Assembly (NCBI RefSeq): GCF_006345805.1
Contig: NC_043000.1
Coordinates: forward strand, 37,448,001-37,512,000
Length of the DNA: 64,000 nucleotides
Direction of reading: 5' to 3'
Source: Octopus sinensis
Taxonomy: Eukaryota
The position numbers were made by a program, and so were the translations under genes. A model generated the notes under the pieces. It was given only the letters and a program-made list of their open reading frames with translations, was not told the origin of the DNA and did not search any database. This document shows positions 9,459 through 37,416 of this stretch, piece after piece; the first letter of the stretch is position 1; each line of letters begins with the position of its first letter.

Positions 9459-9641
9459 AAAGCACGATTGGCTCGTATCCGCATGGCTAAAAACGCGAGC
9501 GGCGCAGCCTTTATCACTAGCAAGAAACGAACTGAGGAGGTCGTACTTGCTAGAGAAAGTGGTCTTGAAGTAGATGACTACAAAGAAGACATATTCGAGT
9601 TACAGCATCATCATCTCTTAACCTGTCTAGAAAAAACTACT
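9459..9641 (+). CDS. Shal: Shal/Kv4 voltage-gated K+ channel, internal coding exon (proximal C-terminus), phase 0-0, 61 codons
   Basis: tttcag|AAA...ACT|gtaagt; translates KARLARIRMAKNASGAAFITSKKRTEEVVLARESGLEVDDYKEDIFELQHHHLLTCLEKTT, matching the Kv4-diagnostic KARLARIR and FELQHHHLLxCLEKTT motifs. Confidence 0.97.
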
Positions 9642-9946
9642 GTAAGTACCATCATGTATTTAAATATTGTGCCATTTAATTTCATATTTATTCACACACA
9701 AACACACACACACATACATTGTAGGACATGATTGATTATACAGTTTGAAAATTTATGATGAGCAGTTTCATAATAGAAGGTAACTAGTGAAGCTTGATAG
9801 AGACTATGTAAAAGGGGTAAAATAGCCCTGAATTACTGCAAAACTTAAATGAATATTTGCAGTACAGAAGCAAAGCTGTAGAAGCAAAAATAAGGAAATA
9901 TTTTAATTCATAAAAGATAATCAATTCTGCCTCTACCATGCAACAA

Positions 9947-9991
<45 letters not shown>

Positions 9992-11307
9992 ATATTTTAA
10001 CAAGTACATTTTTTAATGGTCTCCTATGATATCATATCATTTCCAAAGCATACCAATTGTCTTACAGAATCATTTGAATTTTTTTTTTTTTTCAATGTTT
10101 TACTAATGAATATTCCTTAATAGCACACAGGTAGTATGTCAACACTTCAAATAGAAGGATTCACAATTTGGGTGAGAATCTTGTCTAGTGCAAATTCTAT
10201 ATTTTGTTATTTTCAAAAGTGACAGCTGGTACACATTTATTGTTCTGGTAAGAATTCAAGAACATGTTGAACTATTTGTACTATGTTATTTCATACATCA
10301 GTATCTCACTTATTTGTTTTCTCTTTCACCACTATATATTTAATTAGATAAAATGTCTGAAGATGTTAATGCTTAAACGTGGTTAAATGTAATCATAATT
10401 CCAAATAAACAAATATGAAATGAAAAAAAGCAACAGATGTTTAAGATGTAATGGTGTTAACCTACTGGCTGAGTGGTGGCTGGTGCATTATGATTCCCAG
10501 TAAAGACGCTTAAATTTCAGAAGTCAAATCTAATTAACTATATATAAGTACCATGATAAAGTACATTTCCTTCTGTAAACATTAAGGGAAGAGAAAACAG
10601 AAGATCAAAAAATATCACATGGTCTATTCAAGAGTAGATGGACACTTCCAGTAAAATTATAGGCATGTACTTTAAAGAAGAAAATGATCCTTAATAATGC
10701 AATTCTGTAACTATGCTTTCATAATCAGATGCATGGTCATTTTCCATCACTTTAGAAATCATAGGCTTCATATCTACAAATTACATTGATACCTGTGGTA
10801 GATTTTAAACTCTTACCCACGAGCCTATAGTTCAGTTCAGTTAAAAGACATCTCCCAAGAATATGATAGAAACACTAATTTATGACAGTGTTTACAAACA
10901 GGTGAGAATATCTTGAAGTTGTGATTTTAATTCACAATTTCAGAGAAAAGCTAAATATAAGTGTAAATTTTCTTGCTACCACTTCTATTCATCATGCAGA
11001 ATACTTCCTTCAGTTTTTTTTAAATTTTAATTCTCTTTTATTGAGTCTAAAAATCAGAGTGAGCAAATGTAGATTTTACCTTTAATTGCTTAGCCATATG
11101 GTTACTATGCCACAAAATATAAATATGGACTAGGTGACAGAGTCTACATGTATAAACTTATACCTGTACTGAATAGATATATGAACCCATGGGGGATACA
11201 CAAATTTTATAATCATATATCCTTTGATGTGTCTTTAATGTTTAATGCAAAATCATTTTCATTTTGTCTTTTAAACGTGCATATATTATTGTTGTATCAT
11301 GCTGTAG

Positions 11308-11424
11308 GGTTTAAATATGGTGCTGCCAGAAGAGTTTGGGAAACAAATATTAGGTCCAGAAGCTGTATTGGACTGGCAGGTGTACTCTTATCCTGCAGAA
11401 AGCTCGGTTGAGGAAGAAAAAACG
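11308..11424 (+). CDS. Shal: Candidate Shal alternative cassette exon A (39 aa)
   Basis: gctgtag|GGT...ACG|gtgaga, 117 nt, phase 0-0, no stops: GLNMVLPEEFGKQILGPEAVLDWQVYSYPAESSVEEEKT; paralogous to 24214-24333. Confidence 0.75.
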
Positions 11425-11954
11425 GTGAGAGTAAAGTGGCACCCTAGATAATCTCCAGTTTTAGTTATCCAACATAGAGACACAAACTACTGCACAATGA
11501 AGTTTTAATTACATCAACCTATAGAAACTTGCTTTGTCTGAGAGCATAAATGATCATTGGAAAAAAGCCGCATGGAAAAGAAACATGAAATCATACATAC
11601 AGCCCTTTGCTATGCATACGAATTATATATATATTTGTATATATGTATATACACACATATATATATATTACTTGTGTGTGTATGTGTGTATGTATATACA
11701 CACATAAATATGCATGCATACATACATCATAGATTTACATTCACGTATACACACACATGAACTATGTTATCCTCATCATTTCTATGTCTCCTTTTTCCAT
11801 ACTGGCACGGTTTGGAAGAGAGATACTGAGGTTTGATACTATCTTTCCTTTGTTTTTCAAGGCAGATATTTTTTCTTGTACTGGTCTTCAACAACAATGA
11901 AAACTATTGAGCTATGAGACATAAAAATGTCAATGACAATGTATAGACACCTAG

Positions 11955-11996
<42 letters not shown>

Positions 11997-12167
11997 ACAA
12001 ACACACACATAAATACAATACACTTTCATTCATTTTCTATTTATCAAATTTAACTTACAAAGTATTGGTTAGCCTGAAACTATGGTAGAAGATGCTTGCT
12101 CAAGGTGCCATGCATGTGGTTCTGAAGTAAACTTGTTTAGCTATTCGACCATACTTACACTTACATC

Positions 12168-12203
<36 letters not shown>

Positions 12204-12259
12204 TCAGTTGAAATATGCTTGTGGAATGTCTGGACTGATAAACAAGCCAGTCACTGTGT

Positions 12260-12731
12260 TTTGTCATGGAGAAACTTTCTCGCTGTTGACAATGGTGTAA
12301 ATACACGTAGATCAGTTTGCAGTAGCCACTTTCCAGACTGTTAGATGCAACATTTTGGAGTAGTTATCTCCTCTTCAGTCACAGACACTGCACAAAGGGT
12401 GATGCGAACTGATGAAAGAGAGTTATTCTCTGATACTATTTCAGTCATTGTACGATGACTGACAGCACTACATATTACTGCTTATTGCTGCTACTTTGTA
12501 ATTTACTTATGGTGAGCTGCTGTGTAGTGTTATCAGTCAATGTACAATGAATGAAATAGTATAAGAGAATCACTCTCATTAGTGTGCCACACCATCTGCC
12601 CAGTGTCTGTGACTGAAGAGGAGATAACTACTCTGAAATACTGCATCTCACAGTCTGGAAAGGGGATGCTGCAAACTGATCTACATGTATTTACACCATT
12701 GTCAACAGCAAGACATTTTCTCCATAACAAA
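12260..12731. mobile_element. Fold-back MITE-like palindromic element
   Basis: ~220-bp diverged inverted arms (tttgtcatggagaaa... / ...tttctccataacaaa) around a ~30-bp spacer. Confidence 0.8.
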
Positions 12732-14530
12732 TCTTAATGAATGGCTTGTTTATCAGTCCAAACATTCCACAAGCATATTTGAACTGGTAATAACATTGCA
12801 TTTATGCATGTCACTGCTTAACGCTCCAATTTCATAATATATACCTATAGATATATATATGCATACATACGGATGGACAGACAGATAGACGAACAGACAG
12901 ACAAATAGACAGATATATATTGAAGATCCAAAAGATCCATTTTCCAATGCATGGGTCACATGGAATTTGTTGTAGATTTTCTACAGTCAGATATCCTTTT
13001 TGTTGCGAACCTTTATCAGTTTTCAAGCAACATAATACTTCCTCAAGATTGGATATGCTTCAAAGAAGATTGCTAATGAAGGACTGTTTTGATGTCTTTG
13101 TATGATGGTGACACTTGTTTACAAGTATCGTGTAATGTCAGGACCAGGAAGCACAAACATATCCTCACACACAGATGTACGATAGGCTTCTTTAAGTTTC
13201 CACTTTCCATATCCTTTCACAAAGCCTAAGGCAGCTGGGTTCTTTAGAAGCAAACACTTGCACAATGTGTTTCCCAGTGTGATAGAATCTGAAACCACAT
13301 AATTGGGAAGTGAACTTCTGAACTATGAAGCCAAGCTTGCACTTTGACCATCCTCTGTTGCTAACATACATTCTAATTATGCAGTGAGGAGGAAAAAGGA
13401 CAATAGCTGAATGACTAATGTTATTTTTAATAATTTCCGCAAGTACAAGAGATGACTAGCTGCAATCAGTTCTTGGCCTGGCCATGAGTGAATAAATTCT
13501 AACTATGGAAACCCTCAAAATGAAGGTGTTGCTTAGGCACATCTTTATTTGTCATTGGCCATCAACTGGACAGGTGTGCTACATATGAAGTGGACATCAG
13601 CTATAGGCCATACTTTATGTTAAGCTATTATTTGCATCATGCTCGCTGAGACAATGCATACACTTCGTTACAAAGCCGTATTGAAATATGACCCTAATGT
13701 CTAGGACATTAACCACACGGAGAAGAAGAGTATTGATGTGAAGAGATAAATCTTGGAGCCTGACACTCTGATATGGAAGATAAACGTCTACAAAAGAATA
13801 TATAAAAGCTTAACAAACAAATAAATGTAAACATAAACTTCATTTATATACACAAGAGTGTGTGTATGATTGTGTGCATGTGTGTGTATGTTGTGTATGT
13901 GTGTGCATGTGTAGCGTATATGCATGTATTTGAATAAGAGATCAATGAAAGAAATATTTATTGTAAAGTTCATGCTGCATGCTCTAGTTATCTCTTATTC
14001 AATCTATAAAAACAACAAATATGTTTAAAAAAATATATACATAATTCAATGTACAATGAGCTCCTGACCAGTTATAAATATACTGGTGGATGGTTGTGAC
14101 AGATAAGTACATATGCCATGTTCTTATATGTATATACATTGATAATAAATTCACAATGCCTCAAAACATCAATATAAACTTAGAAATATACTAATAGAAA
14201 ACACAAAGCAATAAGTTTAAGAACTCACAACAGAATATAGGAAACTAAATATAAAATGTCTAAAAATAGTGCAAAACTGTCTTTTTTAATAAGATATGCA
14301 TTAGTCCCCACATCTTGTACAACACAAACACATGCACTTTATGTGGGTGTGCAGGTGTGTGTGTCTGTGTGTATATGTATATACATGTGCATGTATGTAC
14401 ATACATATATGTACATATAAATATGTGTGTATATGTAAATATAATATATATGCATACACATATATTTTATTTTGTGGTACAAAAACATAAAAGAACTCAA
14501 TACAACATTATGTTGGAAGTTAGTAGAGTC

Positions 14531-14593
<63 letters not shown>

Positions 14594-14983
14594 CATTTAC
14601 ACACACATACACACACACAATTCCTTATCAGCCTACAGACATACAACCATTAACCAATGAATGGGCTGACTAATCAAAACCATGATTCAAGTGTAAAATC
14701 TCTGTTTATGTCACATAAGTTAACATATATTCTGTTTGACATACAACAACTCTATCCCAACTGTGCTAGAACGACCATCGCCATCTTTTGAAATACTAAT
14801 TTTCAGAAAAAATTACATTCAGGAGTCATAGCTTTCTCATCAGAATATGAGAAAATGTTCTTGCTTCAAGTAACTGTGTCAGCTCACAACATAGCCCAAA
14901 TATACTTCAATATGAAATGCTCTTATCATAGATGTGAATGATCATTTCTTTTAACTTCAGACATCTAGGACTGATAATAGAGT

Positions 14984-15246
14984 TTTATATTTAAGAGATG
15001 AGGAATTATGTACATTATTTACATTTGATGGATATTTGTCCTCATCTTGTTTGTTGTTAACACAACATTTCGGCTGATATACCCTCCAGCCTTCATCAGG
15101 TGTCTTGGAGAAATTTTGAACCTGGATTCTCATTCCTAAGGTATTTTTTCGATGTTATTATTATTATTATTCAGGTCACTGCTTGGAATCGAACTCGGAA
15201 TCTTGGGGTTAGTAGCCTGCGCTCTTAGCCACTAAGCCATATGCCC
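14984..15246 (-). mobile_element. tRNA-headed SINE with Penelope-type tail carrying a hammerhead motif
   Basis: Minus strand: A box tggcttagtgg, B box gagttcgattcc, (aat)n, then gacacCTGATGAaggctg..cagccGAAAtgttgtgtt. Confidence 0.8.
15059..15104 (-). ncRNA. Minimal type-I hammerhead ribozyme motif
   Basis: GACAC-CUGAUGA-A-GGCUG(gagggUAUAU)CAGCC-GAAA-U-GUU-GUGUU: stem I GACAC/GUGUU, stem II 5 bp, short stem III. Confidence 0.6.
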
Positions 15247-15247
15247 G

Positions 15248-15447
15248 GGCTACTAACCCCAAGATTCCAAGTTCGATTCCAAGCAGTGACCTGAATAATA
15301 ATAATAAAATTGAAAAATACCTTAGGAATGAGAACCCAGGTTCAAAATTTCCCCAAGACACCTGATGAAGGCTGTGGGGTATATCAGTCAAAATGTGTTA
15401 ACAACAAACAAGATGAGGACAAATATCCATCAAAAGTAAATAATGTA
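15248..15447 (+). mobile_element. Second, 5'-truncated copy of the same SINE, head-to-head with the first
   Basis: Reverse complement of 15011-15217 with scattered substitutions; hammerhead GAAA degenerate (cagtcaaaatg). Confidence 0.85.
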
Positions 15448-16445
15448 TCTAGAACTGAATTCAGAAGATTATCTATTACTGAGAATATTCTATCCCTGCC
15501 TTCCTTTCAAACTGTATTACTTCTGATTTTTTTAATGTAACAAGCTCTGCTCTTTAAATTTGTCTCTCCACATTCTCATCACTACACACATCAGCCTCCT
15601 CGCTTCTTCGATACTTGCACTCCACACCAAACAATATATGCTGCTTCTCATTATAGTCTTTGCCGGTCAATGATACTATTTCACCACAATTACATTAACC
15701 CCCAACCTTCGTATTTAATAAGGCATTGCTATACCAGTTCCCTTGAATACATATGAATACAGAAACACGTATGTGCAAATATTAACACACACGTGTGTGT
15801 GTGTGTCTATTACTGAAGTGGAGCAGCTAGTGTAACCAAAGACTACTTTATAAAATCAGTTAGAACACAAATACAAAGAATATATGAAAGAGAATTAAAA
15901 GAGAGTACTCAGTACTCTTAATTATCTCTCATATCCTTTGTATTTGAATGCACACTGATCATATACAGATATTCTCCATTCAAACCAAGTTTAATCTTCA
16001 AGAATTTAATGTAATTGCACAAACAAAAATCCCCTGCCTCTCTCTATATCTCTTTCCTCTCTCTCTCTCTCTCCCACACACAAACACATACAAGCACTTG
16101 AGTACACACTTACAAATGGGACTACATCAATGTTTAATCAATGAGAAAGGTTAAATTACGTATTTAAGAAACTTCCGTTTAAAAGAATGTAACTATATTT
16201 CATTTCAAATCTATAGAATGAAAATAAAATAATAGAATAAAAAGCAAAAAATGCAATCAGCCAAATAATTAAAATTAATTGTTTTTTTTTAATCCTCAAA
16301 GATTATGAGATTATTTACTTTCTGTTTCTAAAAGCTTTAGATTATATTTGGATTTAATTCAGTTTGAAAATTTAGAGTTGACAAGCAGTTGTAAGCCCTT
16401 ATCTCTCTTCACTGTGTTCCTTGATGTACCTGTCTATCAATTCAG

Positions 16446-16511
16446 GGTTTCTCCACCAGGGGTTCAGATGATTTTACCATTTCTAATCATTTCCAAATGG
16501 CTATATTCCAG
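16446..16511 (+). CDS. Shal: Candidate Shal alternative cassette exon C (22 aa)
   Basis: pyrimidine-rich acceptor ...caattcag|GGT...CAG|gtgagt (consensus donor), 66 nt, phase 0-0: GFSTRGSDDFTISNHFQMAIFQ. Confidence 0.6.
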
Positions 16512-16805
16512 GTGAGTTATCTTATGCAAATAGCTACAGTTGAAAACCAATAAACAAATAAATGAAATGAAAATAGAAAATATATGATAGAAAGGAGAAA
16601 AAAAAAACCCTCTATTTAAACATGACTACAGCACTATATCAATAATGCAATGAATATTTAATACTTAAACAATCCATCCCAACTGGCATATAATGCTTTT
16701 CAAGTACGAATACAGAGAAAGCAATTTTACCTCAAGATAATTACAGACGAAATACTAGCATTTGTATGTACTCACTCACACACACACATGCTCTCTCTCT
16801 TTATA

Positions 16806-17465
16806 TATACAGGGTGTGCTAGGTAACTGGAAACTAAACAAAACAAAAGGAGAAACAAAAACAAACCAACATTCTCCTAGAAAAACAGCATACATCTTCA
16901 ACTAGATACACAAAGAAAGTGACCAATCAACAAAACCAACCTCAGTCCTTATGACAGCTTTGATGCAGTGATTGAAATGACTATGCCAGGATAGCTCACC
17001 TCTCCCCATGCCACTCCTGGCTGGTTCCCTTACTCAATAATACCACAGATATAACAGTCCAGTAGTCAAATCATGAGTGCTAAGAGATAACTTATCACAC
17101 AGATCTCCAGAGTTTTGCTGGACATGAACTGCCCACTTGTCGTCATGTAAGACATCCTCACACACCACATATCTGCTTTGCAATAGTTTGCATTGATATG
17201 CTGGTATAGTTGTTGATGATGTTCTGCACATGCTGGATAAACTCAACCATCTTGACATCTGACCACTGAATAGGTTTCTTTCTCTTGGTCACAGATGGCA
17301 TGTTCTGGCCTGAGGCCTCAAGCTTTTTCCTGACCATTAACTCAAAGAATCCAGCTATGTTCAAGAAGGTGGCAATCCCCAACTAAAGTCACAAACACAA
17401 TACACTTTTTCATCTATATAAGACTGGAATTTGGCATACTGATGCTATTGATACACCCAGGTGTA
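16806..17465 (-). mobile_element. Internally deleted maT/DD37D-like Tc1/mariner element
   Basis: Terminus tacagggtgt at 16806, degenerate acaccc terminus ~17460; minus ORF IATFLNIA...VRKKLEAS...KRKK...SD...EFIQHVQNII...SMQTIAKQ and LLDCYICGIIE. Confidence 0.6.
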
Positions 17466-17584
17466 TCAATGCAAAAAATTAAATGAAAAAATAAAAATTT
17501 GCTACATAACACAAAACAAAAATTATGTTAAGTCGTCTTTCATTTACAGCCTACTAAAGTTTACTCATAAACACTCAGAACACC

Positions 17585-17637
<53 letters not shown>

Positions 17638-18219
17638 CGTGTGCATGTGTGTGATGATTATCACTAACATCTTCATTGCCATTGTGTCAGTTTATAATAA
17701 TTGACTATTTACTAAAGTTCTTTTCAAATTTTGTTATTTGTAAATTTTAACCATTTAAAAATCATATGTCATAAAGATGTATAAGTACACACCTTAATTT
17801 TTTATGAATAAACTAATGAAAAAACTTAGGATCAATAAATTTATCAATAGAATATTTTCACTGACATAACTAAATTATGATTAGTAATAGTGGTGTAAGT
17901 GATAGATAGAGAGAATGAATGGTTGAAAGTTTTTAGAGTAACTAGAAAGACTTTTAAAAACTACCAAGGCATGCCTGCTGGATGGAGACTCAGAAGTAAA
18001 GAGAGCACTAGAATGTTTCATGTAGTAAACCAAGATATTTTAATTAAAATTATACCTTAATCAAGAGAGCAATTATTACCTAAATAAATTATTTAATTTA
18101 GTCAAAAAGAGAAGACAACTGTGAAATTAATATCGGTTTCAAATTTTGGCACAAGGTCCATTTGATTTTGATTTGAATCAAATCAAATGAAATCACAATC
18201 AGATGGAAATTGTAATTGT

Positions 18220-18560
18220 GGCAGATGCCAGTGCTGCTTGACTGGCTCCCATGCTGGTGGCATGCAATAAGTACCATTCATGTGTGGGTCGTTGCCAGTG
18301 CCACCTGACTGGCTCCCCTTGCCAGTAGCATGTAAAAAGCACCATCTGAACATGGCCAATGCCAGTGCTGCCAGACTGGTTCACATGCCAGTGGCACATA
18401 AAAAGCACCCAATACACTTTCAGAGTAGTTGGCATTACGAAGCTGTACAAACATTGCCAGATCAGAGTGGGGCCTGGTGCAGCCGTCTGGCTTGCCAGTC
18501 CCCAGTCAAACTGCCAGCATGGAAAACAGACGTTAAACGATGATGATGTTGATGATGTCA
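18220..18560 (+). mobile_element. RTE LINE 3'-end fragment
   Basis: Same repeated gccagtgccacctgactggc units and (gat)n tail as 5345-5815. Confidence 0.8.
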
Positions 18561-19382
18561 GCTGGTTTGAAGAAGAGACTAAGTTGATTACATCAAACCC
18601 AATGTATAACTGGTACCTATTTTATTGACCTCCAGAAGGATGAAAAAAGCAAGTTGACCCTATGAAATTTGAACTCAGAATGTAAAACAGATGAGATGCC
18701 ACAAAGCACTTGGTCCAGAGTGCTAACTATTCAGCCAGCTTGCCACCTTAACCCTGAAATTAATATTAACATTAATTAGATATGGAATGCAGTGGAGAGT
18801 GAGTCTGGTCTTCAACAGACAATGATAACCCTAGTTGTGTTTCAGTCTTATGAGAATTCCCCAGCAAGACATTGCCTAATTACTGCAGATCTTAGATTAC
18901 AAGAGAATTTGAAATTATTATTTTTTTTTTATTGTTAATCATCACAGATTGGCATTGTATCTTAAAAGAATGATTGGGGGGAAATATCTTGGGATGCTGG
19001 CTGCATGAAAGACAAATTATAAGAAGGTTACTAACTTACTTGATGCAGTAAGCCAAGAAATTTCAATTAGAATTACACATTTAATGATGAGAATTTTATT
19101 TTACAAATGAAAGTGAGACAACCCTGAAATATAATTACTGTATTTGATGACATATAATGCAGACTTTTTGATATTAATAATTGGTTTTATAAACTGCCCT
19201 ATGCACTATACATGGATACAAGATAATTTTCTTACTTTGTGGTGACATCAATCCTTTTAAGAGTTGCTATAAAATTTTAGACCATTATTTCTAATATCTT
19301 TGACATTTGTATTTTGCAAGAAATCATTTCTTCAAATCAAAAGTGGACATTAAACACCATGAAGTATGATAAATACTACTAA

Positions 19383-19795
19383 CAGGAGTGGGGCAGTGTG
19401 GTAAGAAGTTTGCTTCACAACCACATGGTTCTGGCTTCAATCCTACTGCATGGCACATTGGGCAAGTGTCTTCTACTATAACCTTGGGCCAACCAAAGAC
19501 TCATGAGTGGATTTGTTAGACGGAAACTGAAAGAAGCCTGTCATCTACATATATATATACACGTGTGTGTGTGTATGTGTCTTTCTGTTTGTGTTTGCCC
19601 TCTGCCATCACTTAACAATTGGTGCTGGTGTGTTTACATTCCCAAAACTTAGCTGTAAGGCAAAAAAAATCAATTGAAGAAGTACCAGATTTTAAAAAGA
19701 TAAAAAAAATATAGGGGTTGATTCATTTGACTAAAATTCATCAAGATAGTGCCCCAGCATGGTCGCAGTCTAATGACTGAAACAAGTGAAATATA
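19383..19795 (+). mobile_element. tRNA-derived SINE
   Basis: Head ggagtggggcagtgtggtaagaag...ggcttcaatcc; tail gtgccccagcatggtcgcagtctaatgactgaaac. Confidence 0.8.
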
Positions 19796-24000: not shown

Positions 24001-24213
24001 TACAGTGAGAGAATTATTTCCATCATTACATGGCTGAATTTGAACTACCAAAAATAAATGATTACTAAACATTTATCCCCTTTATACATTACTGAGGTAC
24101 CCTCTAGGGTTATAAGATATCAATCTGCTATTAGTTTCACCCACTTGATCCTATATTTTTTAAATATAAGTTTAAGATTTCAATGTGTCTACTTAGTGTG
24201 CTATATTCTTTAG

Positions 24214-24333
24214 GGGTTGAATTCTACTACACGCTTACCATCAAGTATGGAACAAGAAATGCAGTCAATAGAACGTGTCTTAACATGGAACTATTACAAC
24301 TATACAAGTGAAGAGCCTGCTGAACACAAACCG
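24214..24333 (+). CDS. Shal: Candidate Shal alternative cassette exon B (40 aa), paralog of exon A
   Basis: tattctttag|GGG...CCG|gtgaga, 120 nt, phase 0-0: GLNSTTRLPSSMEQEMQSIERVLTWNYYNYTSEEPAEHKP. Confidence 0.75.
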
Positions 24334-27310: not shown

Positions 27311-27431
27311 GACGAAAGTAAAGAATATGTACACCCGGTGTTTAGGGTTACGGTTAGGGGTCATGGTATAGGGTTAGGGTTAGGGTTTTTGTTACGCCGA
27401 AAATGGGTGGTACGTATTTTTTACCTCCGTC
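27311..27431. mobile_element. TIR-bounded element with internal TTAGGG-like repeats (short copy)
   Basis: gacgaaagtaaagaatatgtacacc ... ggtggtacgtattttttacctccgtc flanking ttaggg units. Confidence 0.65.
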
Positions 27432-29294
27432 CAGTTCTTTTCGATTCCCAACACAATGAATGTCACGCTAAATGTATTTGTATTAATACACACCAATGGC
27501 TTTTTCAATTTTTTTTAATGATTACACACACACCCATCCGATATGCCCCAATAACACACGCTACCAAAGAACTTGCACCACACTTAAAACAAAACAAAGT
27601 CAATAGGACAGTAACAGAGACCAGATAGAGACATTAACGTGTGAATAAAACCATATTTAACATGAACGAGGAAGTTCCCTAGTCAGCTGTCTACCGAGAA
27701 GTGTGCACTGTATTACGTTGATAAGAAATGCACATATGCACCGGTGTGGGAGTGGTGCATAAACACTGAAGCTTTCTAAATATCGTGGTATTTTCTGACT
27801 CGCCCCAGTCCGTGCAGCAAACACGAAACAGCGGTGGAAAAGGCCTGATCTACAGGATTTTAATTATTGTAACCTGATTAATCATTCACAGTAACACAGA
27901 GTCAAATATAGAACCAACACTTTGCATGTAAGGGAGACAACTCTCTGCAATTTAAAAGTATCAAGAATATTTATGAAGCAGTCATTTGTTTATTTCTGGC
28001 AGTTGATCGGATTAGTACTTTATCTTTACACAAATTTAAAACTGTTTTGAGTTCTGAAGACTTAAAATATAATAAACCAAATTCGGAATTAATCATTTCA
28101 CCACATAACGCGTTTAAACAATTCAAATACAACCCCTTTTTTCTATCTGGAGTTAGAAACTATGGAATTACGTTATTTAGGCACTTACGTTAAAAGAACT
28201 AAGTAAATATCAAATACATTAGCAGCGTGATTTATTCTTATCACTGACAATAACTTTCCTGGCTGTAAAGGAATGTTAAGTCCAGTGGTAGCTGAAATAA
28301 CAGGTTTTCTCTTAGGTGAACAGGCCGTGCTCATGTCACTTTACAGCTTCTTTGACTCTGACAGGTAGAATGAAGGAAGGTATCTTCAAATTTGGGTGCC
28401 AGGCTCGATTACTTGCAATAGAGTGAACTTCGCTTAAGGGATCCAAATTGCTAGATGGTGATGTTAAACCGAGTGACAGATTAAGTCTAGCCCTCAAGTA
28501 AACCCTACCCGGATTTGAACTCGGATCAGAGGGAGCCGGAGCAATTAGCTCAAGGCACCCGGTCCAACGTTTATTACAGTTCCGCCAATTCACTTTTCTG
28601 GATTGGCATTTCATTCACCGAGTCCAAAAGGATGAAAGGCAAAGTTGAGTCTCAAATGTATGTACGTGTCTTTGTGTGTGTGTGTCTGTTTGTGTGCATG
28701 CATGCACGTACGGATGCATGTATGTAATTTCAAGGTCGCTCGCGCCTGTTAAGGGGAAAATTTATACAAAATATGTAATTAATTTATTCCCTTTTAAATA
28801 CATTTATTATATTAAGGGCATTACTATACGTAAATCCCTCGCTGTTGGTACACTGTATATTTATCAAGGTAGTTTTCACTTTAAGAGTCCCTTATAATAT
28901 GTAGAAATGCCCTTAACATATATATATATATATTGGCATCCTTTCTGTCTCGGGAGACAATGGAGTTGCGCATGTTTTTTTTGTAGTCTAGTCCGGCTTT
29001 TATATTTCATGTCCTGATACATTTCCAGCTGTGGCTGTGTAGTCCTATCCTGGACAAACACTCCCTCTGGCAGGTACCGCAAATGTAGCGAAGACTGTTC
29101 CTGGCTGGTTGTAGTGCCATAGTCTCTTGTTTACGTCTCTTCCTTTCTTTCCATTTCTCCTCTCTCTGTCACTCTTTTGTATTCCCTCTTTTACTGTACG
29201 TCGCCGTTCTCCACGGTTGCCGGCAACTGCCTCCCAACCGCTAATATTGATGTATATATATATATCTTATGTATTTTGTAATTTTCTATTCTAG

Positions 29295-29333
29295 CTTAGT
29301 CGAATTACTTATTCTTCTGTTCTACCTTCGGGA
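29295..29333 (+). CDS. Shal: Candidate Shal microexon (13 aa)
   Basis: ttttctattctag|CTT...GGA|gtgagt, 39 nt, phase 0-0: LSRITYSSVLPSG; splice signals only, no homology. Confidence 0.4.
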
Positions 29334-30176
29334 GTGAGTAGACAGGGCTGTGTAAAACCTGGAAATCTATTTCTCAGACGTTCGACACATTCTTGTCATA
29401 TTTGCCACTCTTACATAAATACTTGTGGGTTTATAGTAACATAGCAAAATATATGATTGAATCATGTAATAAAAATACTGGAATTACTAAAATTTAAGAG
29501 ATGAAAATTTCAGGTTTATTTTTTTTTGCAATTAATTTGTTTTTCCATATTTTTCATCAATGTTATTTCAAACTACAAATTTACAAACAATATTGAATTC
29601 CACATTAAAAATAGAAATATATGAACAGAAAGAATTACAATTTTTCTAAATATTTTTGAAATGTTCTTTTTCTTTTTATTAAAAACAGAATAGTTGTCAA
29701 AATTGGTCAATATTAAGAACTGTGGCTGCTAATAACTGTCAGCCAACAGCAGACGTGCTCTTCTTTGTGAGCGCTCAATTTGCAAGAAGTAGCAGCCAAA
29801 CATCCATTCAAAACATGCTTTACAATCTTTAAAAAAATTGCATTTTAAATAATGTAGCCAAAGTATACTAAGCCTGATCAAAAATAAAAAAGAAAAAAAG
29901 AAAGAAAAAGAGCTGCTAGTCATTGTTGAAATGTCTTTGATCCTGTTAAGCTTGACCTTGGGCTAAACAACAATGTCGTCTGCTCGAATTTCTATAATGA
30001 AACCAAGAAAGCAAATATTTCAACCAAACAGGTTTAAGTGGGAGGGTTACCGTTAATTAAATTATCTCGGTAATTAATAATTACTATATATAGTAATAGT
30101 CAAGAAGAAAAGAAAGCTACAATTATTAGTCCAAATGATATCATATAGGGCGAATGAAAGCCAGCAAATAATAATA

Positions 30177-30972
30177 ACAAGAGCACCCAGATAGTGCAAG
30201 CCTCCGCCATGGCAACACCAACGTCCTCTCAACGATTAGCTGGAGATGGTTTTTGAAATGAGAATATCTGAAATAAACTCGACTGCTCTCATAAACGAGA
30301 ATACTAAAAATGAACCTGGTCGCTATCAAAAATTAAGTTTAAAAAACAAATTAGAAAAAAATCGAAAAAATAATCCAGAATTGTTGTCCAGAATCGGATC
30401 GATCCCAAAATCTAATCAGTTCTTGGCAGTCACGAGGCCAAGCATCCCTGAAAGTTTCATCCGAATCCATCCAGCGGTCCTTGAGATATCTCATCCACGG
30501 ACAAATAAACACGACTGAAAACAATACCTCCACCTTCGTTTAGTAGGACGTCATAATCTTTTCTACTTTAGGCACAAGGCCTGAAGTTTTGGGAAGGGGA
30601 GGGCCAGTCGACTAGATCGAACCTAGTACGCAACTGGTACTTAATTTATCGACCCCGAACGGATGAAAGGCAAAGTCGACTTCGGCAGAATTTGAACTCA
30701 GAACGTAGCGGCAGACGAAATACCTATTTCTTTACTACCCACAAGGGGCTAAACACAGAGGGGACAAACAAGGACAGACAAACGGATTAAGTCGATTATA
30801 TTGACCCCAGTGCGTAACTGGTACTTAATTTAATCGACCCCGAAAGAATGAAAGGTAAAGTCGACCTCGGCGGAATTTGAACTCAGAACGTAGCGGCAGA
30901 CGAAATACCGCTCAGCATTTCGCCCGACATGCTAACGGTTCTGCCAGCTCACCACCTTAAGGCGGAGGTAAT
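30177..30972 (+). mobile_element. Helentron/HINE-like element with a SINE dimer (30556-30958) nested in its 3' end
   Basis: Homologous to 20235-20613; 3' part resumes as ttaaggcggaggtaat at 30957-30972. Confidence 0.6.
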
Positions 30973-31480
30973 AATGACGCAAGGAAAGACATGTTTTTAT
31001 TTTCAAGACATTTAACAATATAAACACATGGAAATCAGAAATGGTTTATCACTTCCTTGTCTCATATACTCTTATCATAAGACACATGTAGGTTTAGGAT
31101 TGGTAAAAACCATAAATTTTCAAGAATATTTTTTTTAAATAATATAAGTTTATTATATTAATGAGAAGAAAATAGTGATATGCTAGAAATAACAGCCAAA
31201 ACTATCTTTATTTTTTAACGAAAAGGCTTCTCCTATAATTTTTGAGAAGTGGTAGGCAGGGGGGAGGATTTTTCGAAAATTTCCATTTTCCTAAAATGCT
31301 GCTCCAGATCATCCCCAAGGACACAGCGAAAAAAAAAAACTAAATCTGAAAAATCCCCGTCAAAACGGAGAAACTCCCACTTGCTTGGGCCACCTATCGC
31401 TGATGTCTGCCCAAATATATTGCGAGGGTTACCACGTTTTTTTTTCCAGTGAAATACTAAAAAGATGTTAGCTTCTCATC

Positions 31481-31738
31481 GACGCAAATGGGTAAAGAAT
31501 ACGTACACCTGGTATTTAGGGTTGCGGTTAGGGTTTAGGGCCAGGATTAGGATTAGGGTTAGGATTAGTGTTAGGTTTAGGGTTAGGATTCGGGTGAGGA
31601 TTAGGGTTCGGGTTAGGTTGAGGATTGGGGTTAGGGTTTAGGGTTAGTATTAGGGTTGAAGTTTAGGGTTACGATTAGGGTTAGGATTAGGGTTTTTGTT
31701 GCGCCGAAAACGGCTGGTGTCCTATTCTTTACCGCCGC
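31481..31738. mobile_element. TIR-bounded element with ~25-30 degenerate TTAGGG/TTAGGA repeats (long copy)
   Basis: ggtaaagaatacgtacacc ... ggtgtcctattctttacc; same flanks as 27311-27431. Confidence 0.7.
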
Positions 31739-34494
31739 TATTATCATTTATGTATACAAAAAGAAAATGGAGAAATCGATAGATAGACAACAATTTTTGT
31801 GTGTGTGTGTCCATATAAGTATGTATATGTGAGAGGATGCTGAAAAGTTCCTGGTTTGGGGGGACAGAAAATACAAGAGGATCAGTTGATTATGATTTTA
31901 CGTACACACAATTATTGCAGCAGTCCTTCAATTTTTCTAATCCCTGAAAAAGAACACACACACACATTCCTATAAAGAGCTGCATTATCTGATGTCTCCT
32001 TTCGGTTCTTCTTAAGACACTGGGGTATGAATTGAGGAAGATTTGACTGCTATTTTCGCAAGCTGCAGGATTAAGTACAGGCCCCGATATTTGCCGCCAA
32101 CCTAAATTTACTTATTCAATTTTGCAATATTTCCCAGTAAATATATTGACATTTCTTCGTTTTTAGGTCCCAATGAACTAAAAAGTATTTAGAGCTTGAA
32201 AGATAAAAGAAAATAAATGGAAAATGCTTTGAGCTTCACTTTTTGTCTAATGGTGGTGATGAGGATTAAGAAGCAAGGCTAAGTTTTGGAACAGCTACCT
32301 CAAGGAATTGGGTGCTTTTTACCTTCATCTTTTAGTACTTCTATCTTGCAGACAACGGCAATTACCATTCTCAAACATTTCTTTTCCCCAAAACTTGAAA
32401 ATCTTTTACATTTGTTGCCCTCAGCAATTCCTTGCCATTTTCCCTCCAGGTGAACTCAGGAACCATTGTTTCCTGGTAATTTGTCTTTTTCACTGTTGTT
32501 TCAAACCAATAAAGGAATTTTGTATAGGAAGAAGAAACAGTCAAAGATGACTGTCTCTCTGGAGAAGAAATATTCACAATCATTACCGTTTATCTCAATC
32601 ACCATAATGTCATTTAAGAATAATTATTAAAAAAATAATTACCACATGGCCATGACCATGTCTGGTTCAAAATCTGTTTCCAAGGATTTTATTGTTGTAA
32701 TAAGATTTGCATAGAAATCTCCCAACAAACTTGCATGTTAAATCTATATTCCAATCACCAGATTGATAATGATAAAGTTACTTTACTACACTCTTCATTA
32801 TTTTCAAAATTAATTAAAAATAAGAGCAGAATATTATTTCAACAGAATTATTCCAACAAAATGAATGTTGTGCAACTCTTTTAATGTCAGTCAGTTTTCA
32901 TTTATTTCTAGTCATGTCCAAATATATCGTATTAAATTATATACGTTAAATTATTTCAAATCAGTAGAGAGTAATTAAACTCTAAAAGTTTTTATACTTA
33001 ATGAAAATTAGGATTAAACAATAAAGATATTTATGAAGATGGGGATCCAGTCATTTGGCTGTCAGCTTCTTTGCGATTTGCTAGAGCTAAATAAAAATAT
33101 ATTCTTTAATTAATTCTTCAGCTTAAAATACGAATACTCATTAGTAAAACTTTTGTTTTTGTTTTGTTTTGCAGTTATTGGTTCAGCTATAAAAAGCATA
33201 TTTCACTTTTTTAATCATTAAAAAAAACATCATCGCAAAATGTCAATATATAAATTTGGTTTCAGATTCTGAAGATAAAATTATCATTAATCTTGAAGAC
33301 TATTTTTTCAATTATTGGCATATTTAATAACAAAATATCAATTTCGAAACATTAAAAAAAGAAAAATCAATGAATTATTATTATTATTTATTATTTATTT
33401 TTTTGTTTTTAATTAAAGAAACACAAAGTAATTAATTCGTGTTTAAACAGAAAATGGTGAAAAGAAAAACAATAGCATTAGGGTCACTTCAGTGGTTAAT
33501 TATAAATATTTAATGTTAATTAGTGAAGAATTAAAAGTAATTTTGAAGTACTTACATAAATTATAAACATCTTTCTTCTTTTCATTCGAATACAAACATA
33601 AAGATAAGACTATTTCAGCAGTAAATCATCCGGTTTTGTGGAGTTCGGTGAAGTTGCACGGTTTCAATGGGAGAAATACAGGAAGCCTTTAACCTGGTCC
33701 TACATAATGCTAGAAATAGCAGCAAGATGTCCTTTTAATCATACTATACTTTGAGAAAATAATAAAAAAATACAAGGACATAATTCGATAATGTAGTTAA
33801 AATGATGAAAAAGTCATGATTTTAGAGTTTCATACAGAGATTTTACATAAAACGATTTCAATGTATTAAGGGCCATAATTAATAATCTATTTAACCACTG
33901 CTCATTAAAAGCTCAATATTCATGAAATAAACATGAGATATTTGTAATAAAACACTTGATTTACGACAATTTTTCATACATGAACAATCTTCAATCAATT
34001 ATATTTGCAACAAATACTGGATATAATTACAAAAATATTAAATATTTTTCAATTTCTCTAACTACAAAAAAAATACAATTTTCAAGGGAAATAACTTTAC
34101 TTAAAACATAGTTAAAACTCGGTTTTTATCTCCCCATGGCAAAATGGAATAAAGGACTCTTTTCCAATATCGTTGTCGTTTATGATATAACGCATGCGCA
34201 TTAATGCGAATAATTGTCGTCTGCTCAGCGAAGAAGACGAGAAAAATGAACGCGTTTCGGTTCATGATGTCCTTTTAAAATCTTTAAATTTTGGTTGAAA
34301 TTTAGTATTTTATTAGTTTAAACTGACAAATCCATTGAGGATATACGAGTGCCAGAAAAAATAACATATGAATTTCTTTCCGACATAGTAGTGACCCTGC
34401 CAATTCACCACTCATGAAATAAGTAAGCAAACTGCTTTTTTTTTTTAACCTTCTAATGGCAGACCTACAAAAGTGAACCCAAAACGACTTCGTT

Positions 34495-35010
34495 TTCTCA
34501 TAGCTTCCAGAAAAATTGATATTTTTTTATGCAATTTTCCTAAAAAAATATGTTTCAGATGTTGTAGATTCTGATCATATCGGAATTTGTTGTGAAAAAA
34601 TGTTTTCCGAAGGGAAGAACAGGAGTTTCCGAAAATGATCGGCTCCCACCCCAATACTGACACACATCACAATTTTTACCAAAATTTCAAGTTACTTTTT
34701 TTGATGTGAGTCAGTTTGTATGTGTGAGAGCCTAGCAATTTCTTTCTTTCTTTTTTTTTTTTTTTCACAATAAATTCCGATATAATCATAATAAACACCA
34801 CCTGAAAGGTATCTATAGAAAATTTCACAAAAAATATCCATTCTTGGGAAAGTTATGCGGAAATAAAGGCAACTCCAGTGAATTTTACAAAACTTCTCTC
34901 CTCACTCTCAGAAAAGCTTTTGCTGAACAAAAGTTCTGATATAATCGTAATTTACACTATCTGAAAGATTTCTGGGAAAAATTTCATCAAAAATGGCCAT
35001 TTTTCTGGAA
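34495..35010. repeat. Three ~105-110-bp modules (one inverted, two direct), probable non-autonomous DNA element
   Basis: 34495-34600 is the reverse complement of ~34760-34860, which is repeated at ~34915-35010. Confidence 0.55.
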
Positions 35011-35366
35011 GTTATAAGGAAACAAAGCCATGGCGGGGGGGGGGCACAATTGTGTAGGTATGCTGCTTCTAACAAACCATTTTCGAATTTATCAAGTATC
35101 ATTTTTATTATTGAGTGAGAGCACAGCACATACCATCCCAATTTTGACCCTCCATAAATCCCAAATTTTATTTTGGTATTTATGGGAGCAACTGTCTTCG
35201 ATAACTCATATTGTCGCTGAATGCTCGAAATGGGGAGAAGATAGACAGCAGACAAGTGATGAAGGGTCGTTTTTTGTGTTACTTGTCTTGTTTTCCACTT
35301 TCTTTCTCTCGTTATTTATGTATTTAAATCATTTATTTTCATATTTCATGTTGCTTACTGTTGGTG

Positions 35367-35446
<80 letters not shown>

Positions 35447-35453
35447 CAAAAAA

Positions 35454-36209
35454 AAGACTCCGCCGGTTACGACGACGAGGGTCCCAGCTGATACGATCAA
35501 CGGAACAGCTTGCTCGTGAAATTAACGTGCAAATGGCTGAGCATTCCACAGACACGTGTACCCTTAACGTAGTTCTCGGGGATAATCAGCGTGACACAGA
35601 GAGTGACAAGGCTGACCCTTTGAAATACAAGTACAACTCATTTTTGCCAGCTGAGTGGACTGGAGCAACGTGAAATAAAGTGTCTTGCTCAAGGACACAA
35701 CGCGTCGCCGGAATCGAACTCACAACCTTATGATCATGAGCCGAATGCCCTAACCACTAAGCCACGCGCCCTCACATATAAAATATATATATATATTAAA
35801 TATATATATATATATATTATATTATATTATATTATATTATATATATATATATATTATATTATATTATATTTTTTTTTTTTTTTTAAAAGACTCCGCCGGT
35901 TACGACGACGAGGGTCCCAGCTGATACGATCAACGGAACAACTTGCTCGTGAAATTAACGTGCAAATGGCTGAGCATTCCACAGACACGTGTACCCTTAA
36001 CGTAGTTCTCGGGGATAATCAGCGTGACACAGAGAGTGACAAGGCTGACCCTTTGAAATACAAGTACAACTCATTTTTGCCAGCTGAGTGGACTGGAGCA
36101 ACGTGAAATAAAGTGTCTTGCTCAAGGACACAACGCGTCGCCGGGAATCGAACTCACAACCTTATGATCATGAGCCGAATGCCCTAACCACTAAGCCACG
36201 CGCCCTCAC
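35454..36209 (-). mobile_element. Two near-identical tandem tRNA-derived SINE copies (period 433 bp)
   Basis: 35454-35775 and 35885-36209 differ by one substitution and one 1-bp indel; separated and flanked by (TA)n. Confidence 0.9.
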
Positions 36210-36257
36210 ATATAAAATATATATATATATATAATATATATATATATTAAATATATA

Positions 36258-36331
<74 letters not shown>

Positions 36332-36360
36332 TATATATTATATTATATATATATATATAT

Positions 36361-36580
36361 TGCCAGTACCGCCTGACTGGCCCCCATGCCGGTGGCACGT
36401 AAAAAGCACCCACTACACTCTCGGAGTGGTTGGTGTTAGAAAGGGCATCCAGCTGTAGAAACTCTGCCAGATCAAGATTGGAGAGCCTGGTGCAGACATC
36501 TGGTTCGCCAGCCCTCAGTCAAAACCGCCCAACCCATGCTAGCATGGAAAGCAAATGTTAAACGATGATGATGATGATGA
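36361..36580 (+). mobile_element. RTE 3'-end fragment
   Basis: ...ccaacccatgctagcatggaaagcaaatgttaaacgatgatgatg. Confidence 0.8.
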
Positions 36581-36613
36581 TATATATGTATATATATATA
36601 TATAATATATATA

Positions 36614-36644
<31 letters not shown>

Positions 36645-36658
36645 CATACATACATACA

Positions 36659-36689
<31 letters not shown>

Positions 36690-37257
36690 CCTCATCATCA
36701 TACTCAGTAATATCATATGACAATAGTTGTTTAAGATAATTTGAATTTCAGATACATTGGCATTAATGAGGTTTATCATATAAATTAAAATGAATACCTT
36801 CTAGATGTTAATCATGCTCTCTTTTCATCACAAAATGTTTTTGTTTGTTGCCCTGTTTTTTACTGCTATTTCTCCCCTGTACCAAACAGGAAGAGAAACA
36901 GATATAATGCATTATAATACATAACATGTTGTCATTTAAACAAAGGTCAACCCTGAATAAACAGCCAAATTTATGACCAAAATATCCATGACTTGACCAC
37001 TCTATCTTATTTTTCAGTCACAGCATATCTAGAATTACATTAATTAATGTGCCTTTTCCATTTCTAGAGAGTAGGGTGAAGGGGATTTGATTGTTATTTC
37101 TAGGAAATCAAGCAACCAGATGCTGGCTCACTTGTTATACGTTTAATAAAAAGGGGAAGGGATACTGACATACTATAGTGAAGTATGACATTGTTTGAAT
37201 GCTGATAAGCCTGATATTTCTTTTTACTGATGTTAGTCTTTTATTCCTATCTTTCAG

Positions 37258-37416
37258 GACAGGGAATTTACAGAGATGGATATGACTTTTAGTATACCTC
37301 CTAATAAGCCTTCGGAGACACCTCCACCTTCACCTGATCCATCATTGGCATCTTTAGAGCGAAGGAGGATGACAGGATGCTGTACTTGTAGGTTTTCTCC
37401 ACAACGCCGGTTCCTG
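37258..37416 (+). CDS. Shal: Shal/Kv4 coding exon following KTT, phase 0-0, 53 codons
   Basis: ctttcag|GAC...CTG|gtgagt; DREFTEMDMTFSIPPNKPSETPPPSPDPSLASLERRRMTGCCTCRFSPQRRFL resembles invertebrate Shal DREFxE...P.SP...CC segment; phase compatible with 9459-9641. Confidence 0.92.

What the first reader, a model, noticed from the sequence alone, without database searches (positions are those of the whole stretch)
9459..37416. Array of frame-preserving alternative exons, including a duplicated pair, inside the Kv4/Shal KTT|DREF intron
Seen: the 27.6-kb phase-0 intron holds at least three well-formed phase-0-0, stop-free exon candidates (11308-11424, 16446-16511, 24214-24333) and weaker ones (29029-29073, 29295-29333). 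Two are homologous to each other. Established: vertebrate Kv4.3 has an alternative 19-aa insert (GLSYLVDDPLLSVRTSTIK, with a PKC site) at exactly this junction after HCLEKTT, and Drosophila Shal isoforms also diverge after KTT. Inference: this lineage has built a modular, possibly mutually exclusive, exon cassette to diversify the A-type channel C-terminus (phospho-regulation, trafficking, auxiliary-subunit interaction). I am not aware of such an array being described, but cannot search.
Basis: partly seen in the sequence, partly recalled or inferred. Interest (0 to 1): 0.9.

Follow-up and report, generated by a model that had tools for sequence, protein, structure and literature searches.

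The report
Conserved alternative exons in octopus Shal channel
The large intron in the tail-coding part of the octopus A-type potassium channel gene (Shal/Kv4) holds two related, evolutionarily conserved optional coding exons and a third annotated one, inserted where the channel binds its regulatory partner KChIP; this is a real but not unprecedented kind of channel diversification.

Summary
The window is Octopus sinensis Shal/Kv4. Exons 9459-9641 (…LEKTT) and 37258-37416 (DREF…) flank a 27.6-kb phase-0 intron.

- **Annotation:** candidates A (11308-11424), B (16446-16511) and C (24214-24333) are exactly the exons that RefSeq model XP_036358514.1 strings in series.
- **A and C are real coding exons.** They are single-copy paralogues (score 57 against shuffles 20±4). 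In another Octopus species the introns are about 86% identical, but A is 114/117 and C 118/120, and all five changes are synonymous.
- **A is old.** A distant cephalopod, about as far away as a cuttlefish, keeps only this exon: same 117 nt, same splice sites, dN/dS 0.14.
- **The exons are optional.** O. bimaculoides isoform X2 and Sepia esculenta RNA contigs join KTT directly to DREF.
- **B** has the best splice signals in the intron but no conservation data.
- **Weaker candidates:** 29029-29073 lies in a high-copy repeat. 29295-29333 is unsupported.
- **Mutual exclusivity** is untested. The only inclusion model carries all three.

The junction equals Kv4.2 T489|N490, inside the KChIP-binding segment, and is the site of the vertebrate Kv4.3L 19-residue insert, to which the cassettes show no sequence similarity. 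This is a new member of a known kind.

The parts
9459..9641 (+). Constitutive Shal exon (183 nt, phase 0-0). It encodes KARLARIR...DIFELQHHHLLTCLEKTT, the helix that serves as both dileucine dendritic-targeting motif and KChIP-binding segment.
   Evidence: 100% match to XP_036358514.1 and to O. bimaculoides XP_052822834.1. Corresponds to Kv4.2 S473-T489 (PMC8566240).
9642..37257 (+). Phase-0 intron of 27,616 nt, removed whole in the cassette-free isoform.
   Evidence: The direct KTT|DREF join is seen in O. bimaculoides isoform X2 and in Sepia esculenta RNA contigs. No Rfam family and no nested long ORF.
11308..11424 (+). Cassette A, 117 nt / 39 aa: GLNMVLPEEFGKQILGPEAVLDWQVYSYPAESSVEEEKT. A conserved alternative coding exon.
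   Evidence: Present in RefSeq model XP_036358514.1. Single copy in the genome. In species Y it is 114/117 identical with 3 synonymous changes, against about 85% identity in the flanks. In the distant cephalopod contig L006 it has the same length and splice sites, 26/39 aa identical, differences by codon position 6/6/18, and omega 0.14.
16446..16511 (+). Cassette B, 66 nt / 22 aa: GFSTRGSDDFTISNHFQMAIFQ. An annotated exon whose conservation is untested.
   Evidence: Present in XP_036358514.1. Best combined splice score of 746 candidates. Single copy. No orthologous sequence could be obtained. No paralogue in the window.
24214..24333 (+). Cassette C, 120 nt / 40 aa: GLNSTTRLPSSMEQEMQSIERVLTWNYYNYTSEEPAEHKP. 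A conserved alternative coding exon and paralogue of A.
   Evidence: Present in XP_036358514.1. Single copy. In species Y it is 118/120 identical with 2 synonymous changes, against about 87% in the flanks. Homology to A.
28950..29253 (.). This is not an exon of the array.
   Evidence: More than 1,796 first-look candidates genome-wide. The 40 that were scored are 93-98% identical over about 300 bp.
29295..29333 (+). Unsupported.
   Evidence: Splice score rank 8 of 746. Not in the RefSeq model. No other evidence.
37258..37416 (+). DREF exon (159 nt, phase 0-0). It encodes the KChIP-contact loop (DREF = Kv4.2 N490-F493), an S/P-rich stretch and the CC motif. It is itself skipped in some isoforms of other protostomes.
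   Evidence: It is skipped in Haliotis X3, Mytilus, tick and scorpion isoforms. The Kv4.3 CC motif is palmitoylated (bioRxiv 10.64898/2026.07.03.735752).

Best explanation
The KTT|DREF intron of the Octopus sinensis Shal (Kv4) gene contains genuine alternative coding exons.

Cassettes A and C are an old tandem duplicate pair of about 40 codons. Both are kept under purifying selection. A dates back at least to the common ancestor of octopus and a cephalopod as distant as a cuttlefish. Cassette B is a third, shorter annotated exon of unproven conservation. All exons in this part of the gene are phase 0-0 and multiples of three (183, 117, 66, 120, 159 nt), so any combination stays in frame. The main isoform skips all three cassettes.

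When included, a cassette is inserted at the point equal to human Kv4.2 T489|N490. That point lies between the C-terminal helix (dendritic-targeting and KChIP-binding motif) and the short loop whose H491, F493 and V494 pack against KChIP and the S6 extension. It is also about 40 residues upstream of the conserved CC motif.

Inferred mechanism: inclusion moves or replaces the KChIP-contact loop and adds an aromatic core (VLxWxxYxY) and an acidic Ser-rich tail (possible CK2-type sites). This would change how KChIP tunes current size and inactivation, and possibly phosphorylation, palmitoylation or trafficking of the tail, as the unrelated 19-residue insert does in vertebrate Kv4.3L.

Shown: exon anatomy, paralogy, conservation and selection, presence in a RefSeq model, and existence of the skipped form in relatives. 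Inferred: actual inclusion levels, which combinations occur, and every functional effect.
For: - Gene identity: DUF3399 at E=7e-17. 100% match to XP_036358514.1, which contains A+B+C.
- Paralogy of A and C: score 57 against shuffles 20±4, maximum 48 in 20,000. No DNA-level similarity remains.
- Single copy in the genome.
- Selection, close species: in genomic contigs from runs SRR11869384-94 the introns are about 85-87% identical, exon A is 114/117 and exon C 118/120. All 5 changes are synonymous, dN=0 and dS about 0.11. Binomial P is about 9e-6 for A and 7e-6 for C.
- Selection, distant species: in contig L006 (ERR3431203) only the exon ±25 nt aligns within 4 kb. Length (117 nt), cag|GG acceptor and |gtgag donor are kept, and omega is 0.14. 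Its third-position divergence, 0.46, matches that of octopus against Sepia esculenta constitutive exons, 0.42-0.57.
- Skipped isoform: O. bimaculoides X2 and Logan RNA contigs. The one contig traced comes from S. esculenta larval RNA-seq.
- Structural position: Kv4.2 S473-T489 helix plus N490-D495 loop bind KChIP1, and the H491A/F493A/V494A mutant alters modulation (PMC8566240).
- Precedent: the Kv4.3L insert after residue 487 changes KChIP2b effects and PKC regulation (PMC5296356) and lowers palmitoylation at C546/547.
Against: - No transcript read or contig showing a spliced cassette was seen. The only inclusion evidence is one Gnomon model with a spurious-looking N-terminus, and its supporting evidence could not be inspected.
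- A word-index search with A+B+C found no peptide of 56-177 aa carrying them. Among proteins of about 350-1,100 aa only the RefSeq model did.
- B has no comparative support.
- The species behind the comparison contigs are not identified.
- All functional statements are by analogy with vertebrate Kv4.
Confidence: 0.8

Rival explanations
1. A and C are strictly mutually exclusive exons, one or the other per transcript, as in many tandem-duplicated exon pairs. B is an independent cassette.
For: A and C meet the usual sequence criteria for predicted mutually exclusive exons: same intron, same phase, nearly the same length (117 against 120 nt) and significant homology. Both are kept under selection.
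Against: The only model that includes them carries both plus B in series. Both lengths are multiples of three, so co-inclusion is not penalised by a frameshift. B lies between them. No complementary docking or selector elements were found, only microsatellites.
Confidence: 0.3
2. The three exons are annotation artefacts: intronic pseudo-exons picked up by ab initio prediction and never spliced into Shal mRNA.
For: The RefSeq model is truncated and starts with an odd intron-derived N-terminus. All assembled cephalopod transcripts seen skip the cassettes. No cassette-bearing fragment was found. Other intronic segments have comparable splice scores.
Against: A and C show exon-limited conservation with only synonymous changes. 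A shows omega 0.14 with preserved splice sites in a genome whose introns no longer align. An old duplicate pair that keeps protein similarity, frame and boundaries after the DNA similarity has decayed is not expected of unused sequence. For B alone this reading remains possible.
Confidence: 0.06
3. In octopus the cassettes are constitutive: the O. sinensis model is the normal protein, and the cassette-free form is the rare or artefactual one.
For: O. sinensis has a single annotated model, and it contains all three.
Against: O. bimaculoides isoform X2 (630 aa, full length) lacks them. Roughly 75 Logan contigs encoding the 589-aa cassette-free product exist. Every other mollusc Shal joins KTT to DREF or to a later exon.
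Confidence: 0.07
4. The conserved blocks at A and C are not Shal exons. They would instead be conserved non-coding elements or exons of another transcript nested in the intron.
For: Conservation alone does not say which transcript uses them.
Against: Differences concentrate at third codon positions in exactly the Shal frame (6/6/18 for A against L006, and 5 of 5 synonymous in species Y). AG and GT boundaries in Shal phase are conserved. There is no other long ORF and no Rfam hit in the intron.
Confidence: 0.03

Closest known systems
Vertebrate Kv4.3 long isoform (KCND3 19-residue exon, GLSYLVDDPLLSVRTSTIK, residues 488-506)
   Same: An optional phase-0 cassette inserted immediately after ...HCLEKTT, in the KChIP-binding C-terminal segment and upstream of the CC motif. 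The skipped form is a normal isoform (PMC5296356).
   Different: One exon of 19 aa against two paralogous exons of about 40 aa plus one of 22 aa. There is no sequence similarity beyond chance (P=0.3-0.7). Function is measured for Kv4.3L and only inferred here.
Spiny lobster (Panulirus interruptus) shal splice isoforms (Shal 1.a-1.g)
   Same: An invertebrate Shal gene that diversifies its cytoplasmic C-terminus by alternative exons. The UniRef entries 'Shal 1.f' and 'Shal 1.g' differ after the DREF exon. That these isoforms were cloned and studied is my own recollection (Baro and colleagues, about 2001), not read here.
   Different: In the lobster sequences seen, variation lies downstream of the DREF exon, not at KTT|DREF. 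No duplicated exon pair is evident.
Predicted Shal isoforms of other lophotrochozoans with an insert or skip at the KTT junction
   Same: Mytilus X2/X6 insert IKQIQDCNRKTNTM after KTT. Owenia inserts STQFRLGPFMTGVLSNKTQDTIE before EREF. Haliotis, Mytilus and Gigantopelta isoforms skip the DREF exon.
   Different: The inserts are unrelated in sequence. A profile of A and C found no relative outside cephalopod contigs among 1.84 billion representatives.
Tandem-duplicated, mutually exclusive exon pairs in ion-channel genes
   Same: Homologous neighbouring exons of equal phase and near-equal length, both under selection.
   Different: Mutual exclusion is not shown here, and the single model has both. 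An unrelated exon sits between them.

Membership tests
Kv4/Shal voltage-gated K+ channel gene | Kv4-specific C-terminal domain (Pfam DUF3399) with the FExQHHHLLxCLEKTT motif | tested here: met
   DUF3399 at E=7e-17 across the spliced junction. Motif DIFELQHHHLLTCLEKTT.
Kv4/Shal voltage-gated K+ channel gene | Orthology to annotated Shal proteins | tested here: met
   100% match to XP_036358514.1 (O. sinensis). Exons identical to XP_052822834.1 (O. bimaculoides Shal X2). 74-86% identity of O. bimaculoides Shal X2 to other mollusc Shal.
Kv4.3L-type alternative cassette at the KTT junction | Cassette lies in the phase-0 intron directly after ...LEKTT | tested here: met
   Kv4.3L insert position after residue 487. 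Kv4.2 numbering T489|N490.
Kv4.3L-type alternative cassette at the KTT junction | Both skipped and included mRNAs exist | tested here: inconclusive
   Skipped form seen in O. bimaculoides X2 and Sepia esculenta contigs. Included form seen only as a RefSeq model. No cassette-bearing transcript fragment was found.
Kv4.3L-type alternative cassette at the KTT junction | Sequence homology to the vertebrate 19-residue exon | tested here: not met
   Local alignment scores of 13-16 are within the shuffle distribution, P=0.28-0.68.
Kv4.3L-type alternative cassette at the KTT junction | Insert alters KChIP modulation or PKC regulation | not testable with these tools
   Needs electrophysiology. Only the structural position supports it.
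Functional protein-coding exon (A and C) | Exon-limited conservation with excess of synonymous change, and preserved frame and splice sites across species | tested here: met
Functional protein-coding exon (B) | Exon-limited conservation across species | not tested
   No orthologous sequence was retrievable.
Mutually exclusive tandem-duplicated exons | Homologous exons of the same phase and similar length in one intron | tested here: met
   117 against 120 nt, phase 0-0, 33-37% identity, score 57 against 20±4.
Mutually exclusive tandem-duplicated exons | Each transcript carries exactly one of the pair | not testable with these tools
   No reads are available. The one model carries both, which argues against strict exclusion if that model is evidence-based.
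Transposon-derived pseudo-exon | Candidate lies within a multi-copy interspersed repeat | tested here: met
   True for 29029-29073. Not true for A, B and C, which are single copy.

The most novel reading that the evidence does not exclude
A and C are a pair of paralogous exons conserved across coleoid cephalopods and used in a cell-type-specific, largely mutually exclusive way. They would give neurons or muscle alternative Kv4 tails that re-set KChIP coupling, tail phosphorylation or palmitoylation, and dendritic targeting. This would be an invertebrate counterpart of Kv4.3L/S that arose independently at the same junction, pointing to that junction as a recurrent evolutionary 'tuning port' of A-type channels.
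Probability: 0.3. Interest if true: 0.6.

Novelty: new member of a known kind. Interest (0 to 1): 0.45.

Why it matters
A-type (Kv4) currents shape dendritic integration and firing. Their tuning depends heavily on the C-terminal segment that binds KChIP.

The octopus gene keeps selected optional exons at exactly the residue where vertebrate Kv4.3 has its regulatory insert, although the sequences are unrelated. This suggests the helix/loop boundary of the KChIP-binding segment has been used repeatedly in evolution to diversify channel regulation by splicing.

It also gives cephalopod neurobiologists concrete isoforms to clone and compare. And it corrects the picture given by the single, truncated RefSeq model.

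Tried and rejected
- **N-terminal exons.** Searching the genome for Shal N-terminal exons (Pfam Shal-type and DUF3399, and a human Kv4.2 T1 query from memory) gave nothing useful. O. bimaculoides Shal located the pore exon and the last exon on C4 but not residues 1-358.
- **O. bimaculoides locus.** Isoform X1 never appeared in any search.
- **Short transcript fragments.** The word-index search with A+B+C found nothing. Its sensitivity is imperfect: it also missed the 63-aa orthologue P0182, which shares only three 5-mers.
- **Window ORF look-ups.** Exact look-ups of the window's own ORFs over A, C and B were negative.
- **Third paralogue.** An HMM of A, C and the L006 orthologue searched against all six frames of the window found none.
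- **DNA-level A/C similarity.** None was found.
- **RNA pairing between introns.** The search for docking or selector pairing found only microsatellites.
- **Homology to the Kv4.3L insert.** Rejected.
- **Source species.** SRR23936172 is Sepia esculenta. ERR3431203 is unresolved: its neighbouring accession is a Mytilus coruscus run from a group that, by my recollection, also sequenced Sepia pharaonis. SRR118693xx is also unresolved.
- **Other features in the intron.** No Rfam family and no nested ORF.


Full report
**What is in the window.** The window is G000:C4:37448001-37512000 of a 2.72-Gb, 13,516-contig genome. Its Shal exons match XP_036358514.1 of Octopus sinensis at 100%.
- Exon 9459-9641 reads KARLARIR...DIFELQHHHLLTCLEKTT and ends |gtaagt.
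- Exon 37258-37416 starts cag|DREFTEMD... and ends ...RRFL|gtgagt.
- Spliced together they match Pfam DUF3399, the Kv4 C-terminal domain, at E=7e-17.
- The intron between them is 27,616 nt and phase 0.
- The pore exon lies about 8.2 kb upstream of the window (C4:37439559-37439756).
- The last exon lies about 69 kb downstream of exon 37258-37416 (C4:37554499-37554780).
- Residues 1-358 of the protein were not found anywhere in the assembly.

**Checking the candidates.** A (11308-11424), B (16446-16511) and C (24214-24333) are open, phase 0-0, and have YAG|GG acceptors and |GTGAG donors.
- I enumerated all 746 phase-0/0 stop-free AG..GT segments of 12-80 codons in the intron. With a crude consensus splice score, B, C and A rank 1, 3 and 6. 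Unrelated segments such as 15100-15207 score similarly. Signals and frame alone would therefore not be convincing.
- All three cassettes are single copy in the genome.
- Window 28950-29253, which contains candidate 29029-29073, is a repeat with more than 1,796 candidate copies.
- The three cassettes are exactly the exons that RefSeq strings in series in XP_036358514.1. That model is 397 aa with an odd, apparently intron-derived N-terminus.

**A and C are paralogues.** They align end to end at 33-37% identity. The shared pattern is GLN..LP....E.VL.W..Y.Y..E...E..K.
- The BLOSUM62 local score is 57. Shuffles give 20.0±4.1, with a maximum of 48 in 20,000.
- Neither cassette scores above 33 against 267 other intronic ORF segments.
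- No DNA-level similarity remains between the two.
- No third copy exists in the window.

**Cross-species evidence.** A profile of A and C searched against 1.84 billion representative proteins returned three short ORFs called on Logan contigs. Their contigs were retrievable.
- *Close species (runs SRR11869384-94).* Five contigs align to the window over 1.1-1.7 kb at about 86%, and a sixth (cassette C, from SRR11869385) over about 1.0 kb at 88%.
  - Exon A is 114/117 identical and exon C 118/120. All five differences are synonymous.
  - Flanking intron is 85-87% identical. Splice sites are intact.
  - dN=0 and dS is about 0.11. The binomial probability of so few changes at the intronic rate is about 9e-6 for A and 7e-6 for C.
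- *Distant species (ERR3431203, contig L006, 4 kb).* Only 160 nt centred on exon A aligns to the window.
  - The orthologue is again 117 nt, cag|GGT...CCG|gtgagc, and open, with 26/39 residues identical.
  - Differences by codon position are 6/6/18, and omega is 0.14.
  - Its third-position divergence (0.46) is the same as between octopus and Sepia esculenta constitutive Shal exons (0.42-0.57). The source is therefore about as distant as a cuttlefish.
  - Its identity is unverified.
  - The L006 exon is closer to A than to C, so the A/C duplication predates that split.

**Are the cassettes alternative?** O. bimaculoides isoform X2 (630 aa) joins KTT directly to DREF. So do all Logan transcripts encoding the 589-aa product, roughly 75 contigs. 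The one contig traced comes from Sepia esculenta larval RNA-seq.
- No protein of about 350-1,100 aa other than the RefSeq model carries the cassettes.
- No protein of 56-177 aa carries them.
- Direct transcript evidence for inclusion is therefore missing here. Inclusion is inferred from purifying selection and from the RefSeq model.
- Nothing bears on mutual exclusivity except that the model has all three. Lengths of 117, 66 and 120 nt mean co-inclusion stays in frame.

**Where the insert lands.** In the human Kv4.2-KChIP1 structure, S473-T489 forms a helix. This helix is both the dendritic-targeting motif and a KChIP-binding site. The loop N490-D495 follows it, and H491, F493 and V494 contact KChIP1 and the S6 extension. 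Residues 496-630 are disordered. Mutating H491/F493/V494 changes KChIP modulation (PMC8566240).
- The octopus junction KTT|DREF is T489|N490. A cassette would therefore separate the helix from its loop.
- In Kv4.3L, the 19-residue exon at the same point weakens KChIP2b augmentation and carries the PKC site T504 (PMC5296356). It also reduces palmitoylation of the downstream CC motif.
- The octopus DREF exon keeps an S/P-rich stretch and GCCTC.
- By inference, the cassettes retune KChIP coupling and tail modification.
- The conserved VLxWxxYxY core and the acidic SSxEEE / SEEPAE tail are candidate interaction and CK2-type sites.
- The cassettes are not homologous to the Kv4.3L insert.

**Context and novelty.** Predicted isoforms of many protostomes diverge at KTT. 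Mytilus and Owenia carry small inserts. Haliotis, Mytilus, ticks and scorpions skip the DREF exon. Lobster Shal 1.f and 1.g differ further downstream.
- No relative of the A/C cassette family was found outside cephalopod contigs.
- I found no paper on cephalopod Shal splicing.
- The finding is real. It is already present in one database model but undescribed in the literature. It is another instance of C-terminal splice diversification of Kv4, with the added points of a selected duplicate pair and deep conservation within cephalopods.

**Verdict.**
- Observation: confirmed.
- Interpretation: partly supported.
- A and C are conserved alternative coding exons, confidence about 0.8-0.9.
- B is probable but unproven.
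- 29029-29073 is rejected, and 29295-29333 is unsupported.
- Mutual exclusivity is open, at about 0.3.

Noticed in passing
G000 C4 upstream of the window; whole genome: The exon or exons encoding Shal residues 1-358 (N-terminus, T1, S1-S5) were not found anywhere in the assembly. The pore exon, the two window exons and the last exon are all on C4. This probably explains why the RefSeq model is only 397 aa and starts with an intron-like MICLKTKSLLLVFVFCTSSKVKPLKSELQLADGIL.
   Followed up: partly
window 9459-37416: Every exon in this part of the gene is phase 0-0 with a length divisible by three (183, 117, 66, 120, 159 nt). Any combination is in frame, and the DREF exon itself is skipped in isoforms of Haliotis, Mytilus, ticks and scorpions.
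   Followed up: partly
window 11308-11337 and 16446-16475: Cassettes A and B, otherwise unrelated, both open with G-hydrophobic-N/S, four residues, then acidic-acidic-Phe (GLNMVLPEEF and GFSTRGSDDF). The Kv4.3L insert opens GLSYLVDD, and the constitutive exon has REF at residues 2-4. This could be a convergent replacement for the E492-F493 KChIP-contact loop, or it could be chance.
   Followed up: no
window 28950-29253: An interspersed repeat of about 300 bp with more than 1,796 candidate copies in the genome at 93-98% identity, so it is young and abundant.
   Followed up: partly
window 5474-5830, 18199-18621, 36403-36558: A second repeated element recurs in the window. It gives similar translated ORFs (…PVPPDWLPLPVACKKHH…LACQSPVKL…).
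   Followed up: no
window 4493-5281: ORFs resembling the C-terminal part of a retrotransposon polyprotein (…RGRPRKTWDEVV…) lie upstream of the Shal exon.
   Followed up: no
window about 46980-50170: A tandem duplication with a period of about 1.5 kb lies in the next intron. Identical 65-aa and near-identical longer ORFs recur at 47125/48633 and 48340/49845.
   Followed up: no
L005 (Sepia esculenta RNA contig) against the window: Cuttlefish and octopus Shal proteins are 97-98% identical, including a tail C-terminal to the DREF exon that is identical over its last 93 residues. Third codon positions differ at 42-57%. This indicates very strong constraint on a region that is unresolved in Kv4.2 structures.
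   Followed up: partly
window 24174-24213: The 40 nt upstream of cassette C are 100% identical in the species with about 13% intronic divergence. This suggests conserved branch-point, polypyrimidine or splicing-regulatory sequence.
   Followed up: no
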